Positions 24,401-25,523 of a DNA stretch of 64,000 nt are shown here, piece after piece. The stretch's first letter is position 1. The number at the start of each line of letters is the position of its first letter. A program made the position numbers and the translations under genes. The stretch is from Haliotis cracherodii (Eukaryota): positions 1,550,001 to 1,614,000 of the forward strand of contig NW_027266298.1 in NCBI RefSeq assembly GCF_022045235.1, in the 5' to 3' direction. The notes beneath the pieces are model-generated. The model had not been told where the DNA came from. It was given only the letters and a program-made list of their open reading frames with translations, and did no database searches.

Positions 24401-24868
24401 ATGTGATCCCTACCCCCCACCTTATCTAAAGGAGTGTGAAGAACACAATTAAAATCCCCGCCGAGAATAAGAAGTTTATTGGTGACAAAAAACTTTGCGA
24501 CCCCTTTGAAAAAGGTAACCCTATCAGCAGGGATATTGGGCGCATAGACGTTTATAAAACGAGCACAATGCCCATCAATAGTCAAATCCACCACCAAGAG
24601 TCGACCCTCAATATCAAAATAAAAATAATCCACCACAAAATTGACCAAACGAGAAACAATAAAACCCACTAAAATTACTGCCAAAACTCCAAAAAGCCTT
24701 CCCATTAAAGTTAGATTCAATTTTTTTACCTAAAGTAACATTAGATACATGAGTCTCTTGAAGAAACAGAAAATCGATGCAATCAGAATTGAAATGATGA
24801 GACAACAAAGACAATTTACTAAAATCATTCAATAGACCATTACAGTTGAGAGAGACGAAACTATACAT
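21430..24868 (-). pseudogene. Family B ORF2 (APE-RT), frameshifts near 24670, 22690 and 21900
   Basis: ORF pieces 24614-24868, 22675-24720, 21897-22619 and 21430-21873 are collinear with intact ORF2s. Confidence 0.9.
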
Positions 24869-25523
24869 AGCGAATGGTTGGGGAAAGAAACATTAAACAT
24901 ATGACATAGATAATATGCAAAACACAACAAGCAGAAACAATATCAGGCAACAAAACATTCCATGAAAAACAACCCTTAAAGGAGAAATAACAATAATATA
25001 ACAACCCAATACAAAACCATAAGGTATAAGAGACTATAATAAATATATAATAAGGAGAAAAAAAACAGTATAAGGAAGAGGAAATTAAAACAAGCAAAAA
25101 AAACAAATATAATGTAAATACACAAAACCAAAACAACAGGAACATCAATAACAATGGTGGGAAAAATTCAATGCTATGATCAAGTTCACCCCCTCTATCA
25201 CATTTCATCACCCACCCAATGGGAAAAGAAACCCCAAAACACCACCCCACCCAAAGAAATACACATCTAAAAAACAAACCACAAACTACACCCCCGCAAC
25301 CCACCCAAAAACAAAACAATACACCCAAAGAGTCACACATCACAACACTCAACCCAGCCAAAAATGAGAAAAGGCACCACGAAACTACACCCAACCCAGC
25401 CGGATTAAAGAAAAAACAATAAGAAAAGACACCCAACCCAACCAGCATAGAAATACAAACATGACAATTTACTAGCAAACACTCCCAACAAAGGGAGAAC
25501 CTGGCGGTCAAAACAAAGTCCAT
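24861..25523 (-). CDS. Family B middle ORF (220 aa, hydrophobic low complexity)
   Basis: MDFVLTARFSLCWEC...RYV*; the stop overlaps the ORF2 start as ATGTATAG. Confidence 0.5.
   Translation of the reverse strand: MDFVLTARFSLCWECLLVNCHVCISMLVGLGVFSYCFFFNPAGLGVVSWCLFSFLAGLSVVMCDSLGVLFCFWVGCGGVVCGLFFRCVFLWVGWCFGVSFPIGWVMKCDRGGELDHSIEFFPPLLLMFLLFWFCVFTLYLFFLLVLISSSLYCFFSPYYIFIIVSYTLWFCIGLLYYCYFSFKGCFSWNVLLPDIVSACCVLHIIYVICLMFLSPTIRYV

What the first reader, a model, noticed from the sequence alone, without database searches (positions are those of the whole stretch)
24861..25523. Hidden frame-conserved middle ORF whose stop overlaps the ORF2 AUG in all five two-ORF families
Seen: the ORF1-ORF2 spacer is open in one particular frame in A (35 aa, after removing BEL), B (220), C (149-177), D (241-251) and E (192-213), despite a several-fold length range. 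Each has a related start (MDFVLTARFSLCWEC, MDFVVTARSSPPWEC, MILFSTAWFSLHREC, MALISFARFSLCREC, MANLFNFSRLWES). Each reads the ORF2 start as (Y/H)-V and stops at AUGUAUAG/AUGUAUAA (A, B, C) or five codons later (D, E). In C and E an in-frame AUG also sits within 15 nt of the ORF1 stop. Known: termination-reinitiation uses such overlaps (calicivirus RHDV AUGUCUGA; SART1 UAAUG). Inference: a relay ORF delivers ribosomes to ORF2, and its hydrophobic product might tether the RNP to membranes. Caveat: U-rich, A-poor sequence has few stops by chance, but that does not explain the shared frame at both ends.
Basis: partly seen in the sequence, partly recalled or inferred. Interest (0 to 1): 0.88.

Follow-up and report, generated by a model that had tools for sequence, protein, structure and literature searches.

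The report
Bridging ORF between LINE ORF1 and ORF2
In a group of jumping genes that live in U2 snRNA genes, the long gap between their two known genes is kept free of stop codons in one frame, probably so that ribosomes can be carried across it to the second gene.

Summary
The window is a U2 snRNA gene array filled with Keno/Tx1-type non-LTR retrotransposons on the minus strand.

- **Open frame:** in families B, C, D and E, the 512-770 nt T-rich gap between ORF1 and ORF2 has no stop in one frame. The other two frames have 5-16 stops each. Shuffles give P of about 0.001 per family, and equally T-rich 3'UTRs are not open.
- **Family A:** once the BEL insertion is removed, A has a 35-codon version.
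- **Other families:** three distant families in the same genome and one foreign relative also have an ORF that tiles the gap. It starts within 40 nt of the ORF1 stop and ends 31 nt before to 20 nt after the ORF2 AUG.
- **No protein conservation:** the same nucleotides are read in different codon phases in different families, there is no codon periodicity, and there is no Pfam hit or homologue.
- **The "related starts":** these come from a conserved RNA-level block that contains a small hairpin.
- **Frame:** the foreign relative uses a different frame, so the gap-tiling ORF is conserved but the frame is not universal.

Best reading: a translated bridging ORF that couples ORF2 translation to upstream translation by termination-reinitiation. 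This is inferred. I could obtain no expression data.

The parts
24861..25523 (-). Family B middle (bridging) ORF, 220 codons. Its stop overlaps the ORF2 AUG (ATGTATAG).
   Evidence: The copy is otherwise dead, with ORF1 and ORF2 frameshifted.
24866..24868 (-). Family B ORF2 start codon. The ORF2 frame breaks after about 84 codons.
25482..25497 (-). Conserved hairpin CTCCC-N6-GGGAG inside the start of the B middle ORF.
32007..32540 (-). Family C copy 1 middle ORF, 177 codons. Its first AUG overlaps the ORF1 end by 14 nt and its stop is at +5 of the ORF2 AUG (32014).
38882..39415 (-). Family C copy 2 middle ORF, with the same stop pattern as copy 1.
45760..46515 (-). Family D middle ORF, 251 codons. 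Its stop is 20 nt after the A of the ORF2 AUG (45782).
56049..56690 (-). Family E copy 1 middle ORF, 213 codons. Its AUG is 5 nt after the ORF1 stop and its stop is 20 nt after the A of the ORF2 AUG (56071).
63145..63786 (-). Family E copy 2 middle ORF, identical in protein to copy 1.
16414..16507 (-). Family A middle ORF, 5' part. It contains the conserved block and hairpin and is cut off by the BEL 3' LTR.
4447..4460 (-). Family A middle ORF, 3' part. It comprises the target-duplication copy, the overlap with the ORF2 AUG at 4452-4454, and the stop TAA at 4447-4449.
32415..32430 (-). Conserved hairpin in family C.
46444..46459 (-). Conserved hairpin in family D.
56586..56601 (-). Conserved hairpin in family E.

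Best explanation
The ORF1-ORF2 gap of these Keno/Tx1-type LINEs is occupied by a third, sense-strand ORF. Selection keeps it open, but its amino-acid sequence is free to drift.

Proposed mechanism (inferred):
1. Ribosomes that finish ORF1 restart at an AUG lying from 14 nt before to 37 nt after the ORF1 stop. The ORF1 stop follows the conserved (D/E)-P-P ending.
2. They translate across the whole gap. This carries them past the 10-14 AUGs there that would trap a scanning 40S subunit.
3. They terminate 31 nt before to 20 nt after the ORF2 AUG and restart there.

Only the act of translation matters, which would explain why the frame is kept but the sequence is not.

The short forms (A with 35 codons, F with 28 codons) look like ordinary reinitiation after a short ORF. 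The long forms (B-E) would be T/G-rich expansions of such a gap that were tolerated only while they stayed in frame.

Shown: frame-specific absence of stops, tiling of the gap, and lack of protein-level conservation. Inferred: that the ORF is translated, and that ORF2 output depends on it.
For: - **Frame-specific openness.** Searches give P of about 0.0003-0.004 per family. In one search all stop trinucleotides lie in the other two frames. The 3'UTR control is not open.
- **Divergence.** The spacers are only 51-66% identical and differ in length by up to 258 nt, so openness cannot simply be inherited.
- **Decay in dead copies.** A dead B copy 99% identical to the window copy already carries two 1-nt indels in T runs, which break the frame.
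- **Other families.** The distant same-genome families G, H and I (40-44% ORF2 identity, ordinary A content) and the foreign L051 (64% identity) each have one ORF covering 90-100% of a 247-347 nt gap, with P<=0.009 each.
- **Family G copies.** They differ by 8 substitutions, 5 of them non-synonymous. Their only two indels are 3 nt long.
- **No protein constraint.** There is no codon periodicity. A conserved nucleotide block is read in three different phases in C, D and E. There is no Pfam hit and no homologue among 5.8 billion proteins.
- **Relay simulation.** A greedy 'restart at the next AUG' chain goes ORF1 to middle ORF to ORF2 directly in C, G and H, and after one 13-19-codon mini-ORF in I (to an in-frame AUG 42 nt upstream) and X51. 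In D and E the chain reaches the middle ORF (in D after a 14-codon mini-ORF), whose stop lies 20 nt past the A of the ORF2 AUG.
- **Relatives with short gaps.** In Tx1-like relatives without a long gap, ORF1 itself ends 4 nt into ORF2 (ATGA) or at most 104 nt before it.
- **Literature.** Termination-reinitiation is documented for SART1 and proposed for L1. Tightly spaced, slightly overlapping ORFs are the hallmark of linked translation in CaMV (PMC5972666). How ORF2 is reached across long LINE spacers is described as unresolved (PMC3894237).
Against:
- Reinitiation after ORFs of 150-250 codons is normally inefficient in eukaryotes unless a tether such as TURBS or a factor such as TAV is present (PMC5972666). 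Neither is demonstrated here.
- No conserved structure was found just downstream of the ORF2 AUG.
- Two successive restarts would give very low ORF2 yield.
- Family F has only a partial bridge.
- Several more distant foreign elements with long gaps (L100, L103, L124) have no bridge.
- The constant +1 relation of ORF2 to the middle ORF in this genome would also fit a frameshift fusion.
Confidence: 0.55

Rival explanations
1. The middle ORF encodes a functional small hydrophobic or membrane protein that is selected for composition rather than sequence, for example a membrane tether for the RNP. Its position next to ORF2 would be incidental.
For: The products are rich in F, L, V, C, I and W in all families. 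The ORF is clearly maintained. T-rich sequence encodes hydrophobic residues in any phase, so phase changes would not destroy such a property.
Against: - The real frame is not consistently more hydrophobic than the other two frames.
- The equally T-rich 3'UTR shows that this composition is a general feature of the non-coding parts of the element.
- There is no periodicity and no homologue or domain.
- Substitutions among G copies are mostly non-synonymous.
- An independent gene would not need to fill the gap from the ORF1 stop to the ORF2 AUG in every family.
Confidence: 0.18
2. The middle ORF is joined to ORF2 by a +1 ribosomal frameshift at or near its stop codon. This would give ORF2p a long N-terminal extension. 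The open frame would then be the coding part of a fusion protein.
For: In all eight families of this genome (A-E, G, H, I) ORF2 lies in the +1 frame relative to the middle ORF. This includes H and I, where the conserved M-Y-(S/N/K) start of ORF2 does not dictate the stop. In A-E, G and I the two frames overlap or are contiguous, so a +1 shift at the stop would read straight into ORF2 (my reading).
Against: - In H an ORF2-frame stop lies between the middle-ORF stop and the ORF2 AUG, so a fusion is impossible.
- The foreign relative L051 uses the other frame.
- The ORF2 AUG sits exactly at the N-terminus of the endonuclease domain and is conserved in all families.
- No shared shift-prone motif was seen.
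Confidence: 0.08
3. Translation of the gap is needed for something other than delivering ribosomes to ORF2. Examples are remodelling the RNA or stripping ORF1p in cis, protecting the RNA from decay, or exposing the conserved hairpin.
For: The evidence shows selection for an open frame without sequence constraint. A conserved hairpin with a (U/A)GGGAG arm lies at the start of the ORF. Translation-dependent remodelling of TURBS has been proposed in caliciviruses (PMC5972666).
Against: This does not explain why the ORF must end within about 30 nt of the ORF2 AUG in every family. No specific structure was found in the variable part.
Confidence: 0.14
4. The open frame is a chance result of T-rich, A-poor sequence, shared by descent among related families.
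For: A content is only 12-15% in B-E. ORFs of 104-130 codons occur by chance in other frames and in 3'UTRs.
Against: - Shuffles give P of about 0.001 per family.
- 3'UTR controls are not open.
- The spacers have diverged to 51-66% identity with many indels yet stay open.
- Families with normal A content (G, H, I) also show the ORF.
- Dead copies lose it.
Confidence: 0.03

Closest known systems
SART1 (Bombyx R1-clade LINE) translational coupling at UAAUG
   Same: A bicistronic LINE RNA in which ORF2 is reached by termination-reinitiation at an overlapping stop/start (PMC5972666, PMC3894237). Here too a stop overlaps or abuts the ORF2 AUG.
   Different: In SART1 it is ORF1 itself that terminates at the ORF2 AUG, and there is no gap. 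Here an extra ORF of 28-251 codons is interposed and two restarts are needed. The downstream RNA structure that SART1 requires was looked for and not found after the ORF2 AUG. A small conserved hairpin instead follows the middle-ORF AUG.
Calicivirus termination-reinitiation with TURBS
   Same: Restart after a long ORF at an AUG a few nucleotides from the stop. The conserved hairpin arm contains UGGGA (A, B, D, L051) or AGGGA (C, E, F). UGGGA is the core of TURBS motif 1.
   Different: In B-E the motif lies 400-670 nt upstream of the ORF2 restart site, not a few tens of nucleotides upstream, the position I recall for caliciviruses. Only in the short family A is it about 60 nt upstream. Pairing with 18S rRNA was not tested. 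The resemblance is a lead, not a finding.
CaMV polycistronic translation (TAV-dependent reinitiation over consecutive, tightly spaced, slightly overlapping long ORFs)
   Same: A chain of ORFs tiled end to end on a retroelement RNA, with short overlaps compatible with linked translation.
   Different: In CaMV every ORF encodes a conserved protein and a viral transactivator is required. Here the interposed ORF has no conserved product, and no transactivator is known.
Mammalian LINE-1 ORF2 translation (unconventional termination-reinitiation across a 63-nt spacer)
   Same: The same problem and the same proposed class of solution.
   Different: The L1 spacer is short and carries in-frame stops, with no bridging ORF. 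The only 'third ORF' described for L1 is the primate antisense ORF0 upstream of ORF1 (PMC5203782).
Keno, the U2 snRNA gene-specific Tx1-clade LINE
   Same: APE + RT ORF2. The elements sit in a U2 array with a U2 gene 3' of each element. Keno is described as APE-type, U2-targeting, and present in frogs, fish, lancelet and hydra (PMC4640811).
   Different: The papers I could read say nothing about the region between Keno's ORFs, and none of them describes a middle ORF in a non-LTR element.

Membership tests
Keno / Tx1-clade APE-type non-LTR retrotransposon | ORF2 with an apurinic-like endonuclease followed by a reverse transcriptase | tested here: met
   Exo_endo_phos (residues 6-227), RVT_1 (517-731) and zf-RVT in the family E ORF2. 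Homologues carry the same domains.
Keno / Tx1-clade APE-type non-LTR retrotransposon | Site-specific insertion in U2 snRNA genes | tested here: met
   nine U2 hits, all on the minus strand, one directly 3' of each element. The exact insertion coordinate within U2 was not mapped.
Termination-reinitiation (translational coupling) | Stop of the upstream ORF overlaps or lies within a few tens of nt of the downstream AUG | tested here: met
   Middle-ORF stop codon begins at +5 (A, B, C, G), +20 (D, E), +10 (L051), -13 (H), -31 (I) and -51 (F) relative to the A of the ORF2 AUG. ORF1 stop to middle-ORF AUG is -14 to +37 nt.
Termination-reinitiation (translational coupling) | Downstream ORF expression depends on translation and termination of the upstream ORF | not testable with these tools
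   This needs reporters or ribosome profiling.
Calicivirus-type TURBS | UGGGA motif complementary to 18S rRNA helix 26, placed a few tens of nt upstream of the restart site and displayed by a flanking stem | tested here: inconclusive
   A (U/A)GGGAG motif is conserved. However, it is base-paired in a hairpin and lies 405-666 nt from the ORF2 AUG in B-E. It is near the AUG only in family A. Pairing with 18S was not examined.
SART1-type coupling | UAAUG overlap between ORF1 and ORF2 plus a required RNA structure downstream of the restart site | tested here: not met
   ORF1 ends 165-770 nt upstream of ORF2. The consensus fold of -30..+150 around the ORF2 AUG in eight families is only -1.5 kcal/mol.
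Conserved accessory protein family | Detectable homologues, a domain, or purifying selection on amino acids | tested here: not met
   No Pfam hit for eight middle ORFs. No homologue at E<=0.001 among 5.8 billion proteins. Phase-shifted homologous blocks. 5 of 8 substitutions among G copies are non-synonymous.

The most novel reading that the evidence does not exclude
LINE ORF2 translation in this clade obligatorily uses a 'ribosome conveyor'. This is a sequence-free ORF of up to 250 codons whose only function is to be translated. It links two termination-reinitiation events on one RNA without a viral transactivator. The conserved (U/A)GGGAG hairpin would act as a ribosome-tethering or restart element. 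If true, it would be the first natural case in which evolution selects an ORF purely for ribosome transit in a eukaryotic retroelement. It would also give a tractable model for the old question of how LINE ORF2 is translated.
Probability: 0.35. Interest if true: 0.8.

Novelty: new variant of a known kind. Interest (0 to 1): 0.62.

Why it matters
How ribosomes reach ORF2 on a bicistronic LINE RNA has been unclear for decades. Reviews note that long inter-ORF regions make simple reinitiation improbable and suggest IRESs instead (PMC3894237).

Here evolution has run the experiment. Across families whose gaps are unalignable and differ several-fold in length, one frame is kept free of stops from the ORF1 stop to the ORF2 AUG, with no constraint on the encoded sequence. 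That is the signature expected if ribosomes must translate across the gap.

The idea is directly testable with reporters. It also cautions annotators that a long 'hypothetical protein' ORF inside a LINE may be selected for translation and not for its product.

Tried and rejected
- **Chance from composition.** Rejected by dinucleotide shuffles and by the 3'UTR control.
- **Antisense ORF constraining the sense frame.** Rejected. Antisense frames carry 4-18 stops.
- **Conserved protein.** No Pfam hit, no homologue, no periodicity.
- **Selection for hydrophobicity in the true frame.** Not seen.
- **C-terminal extension of ORF1 by readthrough or frameshift.** The frame relation of the middle ORF to ORF1 is not constant. 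It is +1 in C and D, -1 in E, G and I, and 0 in H and L051. In D the shifted frame hits a stop after about 10 codons.
- **SART1-like structure after the ORF2 AUG.** Not found.
- **Conserved protein-level 'start'.** It is a nucleotide block with a hairpin, present in L051 as well, where the AUG is elsewhere.
- **Cross-species context via the look-up of encoding contigs.** I used one metagenome scan instead.
- **Literature.** Searches for a described sense middle ORF in Keno, Tx1 or L1 found none. That covers only the open-access library.
- **Shared k-mers.** A search among the spacers found little beyond the 5' block.

Full report
**Setting.** The window is G000:C35:1550001-1614000. Rfam finds nine U2 snRNA genes, all on the minus strand. 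Between them lie non-LTR retrotransposons on the same strand. Their ORF2 has an Exo_endo_phos endonuclease, RVT_1 and zf-RVT. This matches Keno, the U2-specific Tx1-clade LINE (PMC4640811).

ORF2 start codons (M-Y-N/S-F...NCNG) lie at 4454 (A), 24868 (B), 32014 and 38889 (C), 45782 (D), and 56071 and 63167 (E). The finding's own coordinates (24861-25523) are the family B copy. That copy is dead. Its ORF2 is in several pieces, and its ORF1 is frameshifted so that the true ..EPP stop lies near 25594.

For family A, I mapped the interrupting BEL element:
- Its LTRs are about 10605-10967 and 16046-16408.
- A tRNA-primer-like site follows the 5' LTR and a polypurine tract precedes the 3' LTR.
- The 5-bp target duplication is at 4456-4460 and 16409-16413.
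- A second non-LTR element is nested in the 5' LTR.

Removing these and one duplication copy puts the two halves in frame.

**Is it more than chance?** I counted stops by frame relative to the A of the ORF2 AUG.

| Family | Gap length (nt) | Stops in frames 0 / 1 / 2 |
|---|---|---|
| C | 512 | 5 / 9 / 0 |
| E | 624 | 10 / 5 / 0 |
| D | 770 | 16 / 6 / 1 (the single frame-2 stop lies before the first AUG) |
| B | 655 nt of middle ORF | 13 / 11 / 0 |

- Dinucleotide-preserving shuffles expect 6-9 stops per frame. They give P(frame 2 this open) of 0.0003-0.004.
- The 3'UTRs of the same elements have the same composition (T 41-50%, A 15-17%). They carry 1-9 stops in every frame.
- The antisense frames carry 4-18 stops.
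- The spacers are only 51-66% identical and are essentially unalignable outside a 5' block. The open frame therefore cannot be a passive inheritance.
- A dead B copy 99% identical to the window copy already has two single-base indels in T runs that break the frame. This shows how quickly the frame decays without selection.

**Independent families.** A six-frame search of the whole genome with the ORF2 N-terminus found further families.
- Three families with only 40-44% ORF2 identity and ordinary base composition (A about 28%) have gaps of 312, 247 and 309 nt (G, H and I). In each, one ORF covers 90-100% of the gap. A coverage test against shuffles gives P<=0.003 for each.
- Family F (58% identity, 188-nt gap) has only a 28-codon ORF. 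It starts at the homologous place and ends 48 nt before the ORF2 AUG, and the remaining stretch is AUG-free.
- More distant families (about 30% identity) have no gap to speak of. ORF1 ends 32-45 nt before ORF2.

- Among 43 loci in total with ORF1 and ORF2 open, 30 have gaps of 104 nt or less. Four of these have ORF1 ending in ATGA on the ORF2 start.
- The closest foreign relative, L051 (64% identity), has a 347-nt T-rich gap fully covered by one ORF, from the ORF1 stop to 13 nt past the A of the ORF2 AUG (P=0.009). That ORF is in frame 1, not frame 2.
- A few distant foreign elements with long gaps have no bridge (L100, L103, L124) or a partial one (L101, L113).

A gap-tiling ORF recurs. The particular frame is constant within this genome but is not universal.

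**What is conserved, and what is not.** The product is not conserved.
- There is no codon-position periodicity.
- In the best-aligned pair (C and E), only 53% of aligned positions are in the same codon phase.
- A conserved nucleotide block (CAG, 16 nt, GGTA(A/T)GT) is read in three different phases in C, D and E.
- The true frame is not more hydrophobic than the other two. The F/L/V/C-rich product simply reflects T/G-rich DNA.
- No middle ORF matches Pfam. The E product has no homologue among 5.8 billion proteins.
- Among four family G copies there are 8 substitutions, 5 of them non-synonymous, and two indels, both of 3 nt.

It includes a small hairpin, CUCCC-loop-GGGAG, with a variable loop and one compensatory pair in L051. 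Its phase relative to the ORF2 AUG is the same in B, C, D, E and L051.

The stop at AUGUAUAG/A is an automatic consequence of ORF2 beginning M-Y-(S/N/K). Frame 2 is the frame that offers a stop right at the AUG, whereas frame 1 runs on to +37 in most Keno families. This can explain the frame preference without any further assumption.

**Mechanism.** The anatomy is a tiling.
- The middle-ORF AUG lies from 14 nt before to 37 nt after the ORF1 stop.
- Its stop lies 31 nt before to 20 nt after the ORF2 AUG. In family I it overlaps an in-frame upstream ORF2 AUG.
- The gaps hold 10-14 AUGs in all frames, so a 40S subunit scanning from the ORF1 stop would be captured long before ORF2.

The simplest account is that ribosomes restart after ORF1, translate across the gap, terminate at the ORF2 AUG and restart again. 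This is termination-reinitiation as documented for SART1, caliciviruses and CaMV and proposed for L1 (PMC5972666), but with an interposed ORF that has no product constraint.

The steps from 'open frame under selection' to 'translated' and to 'needed for ORF2' are inferences. Restart after 150-250 codons usually needs a tether or a factor, and none is shown here. I found no conserved structure just after the ORF2 AUG. The hairpin arm contains the UGGGA/AGGGA core of TURBS motif 1, but in B-E it lies hundreds of nucleotides from the ORF2 restart site. I record that only as a lead.

**Rivals.**
- A composition-selected hydrophobic protein cannot be excluded, but it has no specific support.
- A +1 frameshift fusion to ORF2 would explain the constant +1 relation in this genome. 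It is blocked by a stop in family H, contradicted by L051, and unnecessary given the conserved ORF2 AUG.
- Some other need for translating the gap is possible, but it does not explain why the ORF ends at the ORF2 AUG.
- Chance is excluded.

**Novelty.** Reviews describe long LINE inter-ORF regions as an unsolved problem and suggest IRESs (PMC3894237). The only 'third ORF' mentioned for L1 is the antisense ORF0 (PMC5203782). I found no description of a sense bridging ORF in Keno, Tx1 or L1 in the searchable library. This does not prove that none exists elsewhere. I class it as a new variant of a known kind, namely translational coupling by termination-reinitiation.

**Limits.**
- Cross-species sampling rests on one metagenome scan of short contigs.
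- Alignments of low-complexity spacers are uncertain, although the phase argument rests on clearly homologous blocks.
- Copies within families are few and partly segmental duplicates.
The family A reading across the insertion is described only in words.

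Noticed in passing
window 56281-56314 (E), 32132-32165 (C), 46045-46078 (D), minus strand: A conserved block inside the otherwise variable spacer. It has a pyrimidine run plus CAG, then exactly 16 nt, then GGTA(A/T)GT. 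This looks like a 3' splice site followed by a 5' splice site or U1-binding site. It is read in three different codon phases in the three families. Its function is unknown.
   Followed up: partly
window 24877-24886 (B), 56080-56092 (E), 45791-45803 (D), minus strand: A C/A-rich island (CCAACC / ACAACC / AACCACC) lies 8-20 nt upstream of the ORF2 AUG in families A-F, inside T/G-rich sequence. It may be a restart or context element.
   Followed up: no
window 4461-16408: Nested insertions in the family A spacer. A BEL/Pao-type LTR element sits on the plus strand, with target duplication AAAAC. Its 5' LTR is split by two tandem copies of an RNase H-bearing non-LTR element, one of them 5'-truncated. 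The same 13-nt LTR sequence is repeated at 4474-4486, 9937-9949 and 10605-10617.
   Followed up: partly
L111 (JAAUYA010287723.1) 2603-3490: A distant (28% identity) foreign Tx1-like element has a 948-nt gap. A 296-codon stop-free frame of ordinary composition ends on the ORF2 AUG. The gap has 3 stops in that frame against 29 and 20 in the others. There is no Pfam domain. This may be a true third gene in that lineage.
   Followed up: partly
L068, L069, L076, L128 (metagenome contigs): In these Tx1-like elements ORF1 ends in ATGA, overlapping the ORF2 start codon. This is the classical stop/start overlap.
   Followed up: no
L016/L017/L049 = G000:C35:1628485-1632384 and 1674154-1678053: A sixth two-ORF Keno family (F) lies in the same U2 array, outside the window. 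Its ORF1 and ORF2 are intact, its gap is 188 nt, and it has only a 28-codon middle ORF followed by an A-rich, AUG-free 48 nt.
   Followed up: yes
window 52193-52585, 59289-59681, 42005-42346, minus strand: ORFs of 113-130 codons in the 3'UTRs of E and D. Other families' 3'UTRs have 2-9 stops in every frame, so these are compatible with chance in A-poor sequence.
   Followed up: yes
window 25594-25866: The family B ORF1 listed by the ORF finder (25866-26996) is truncated by a frameshift. The homologous C-terminus (...EPP-stop) continues in another frame to about 25594.
   Followed up: yes
window 16520-16545; L023, L048, L049 just after the ORF1 stop: A near-palindromic motif TGTCCC(Y)GGAC lies shortly after the ORF1 stop. 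It is conserved from Keno A, B, D and F to the distant G and H families. It is read in different frames, and G has two copies.
   Followed up: no
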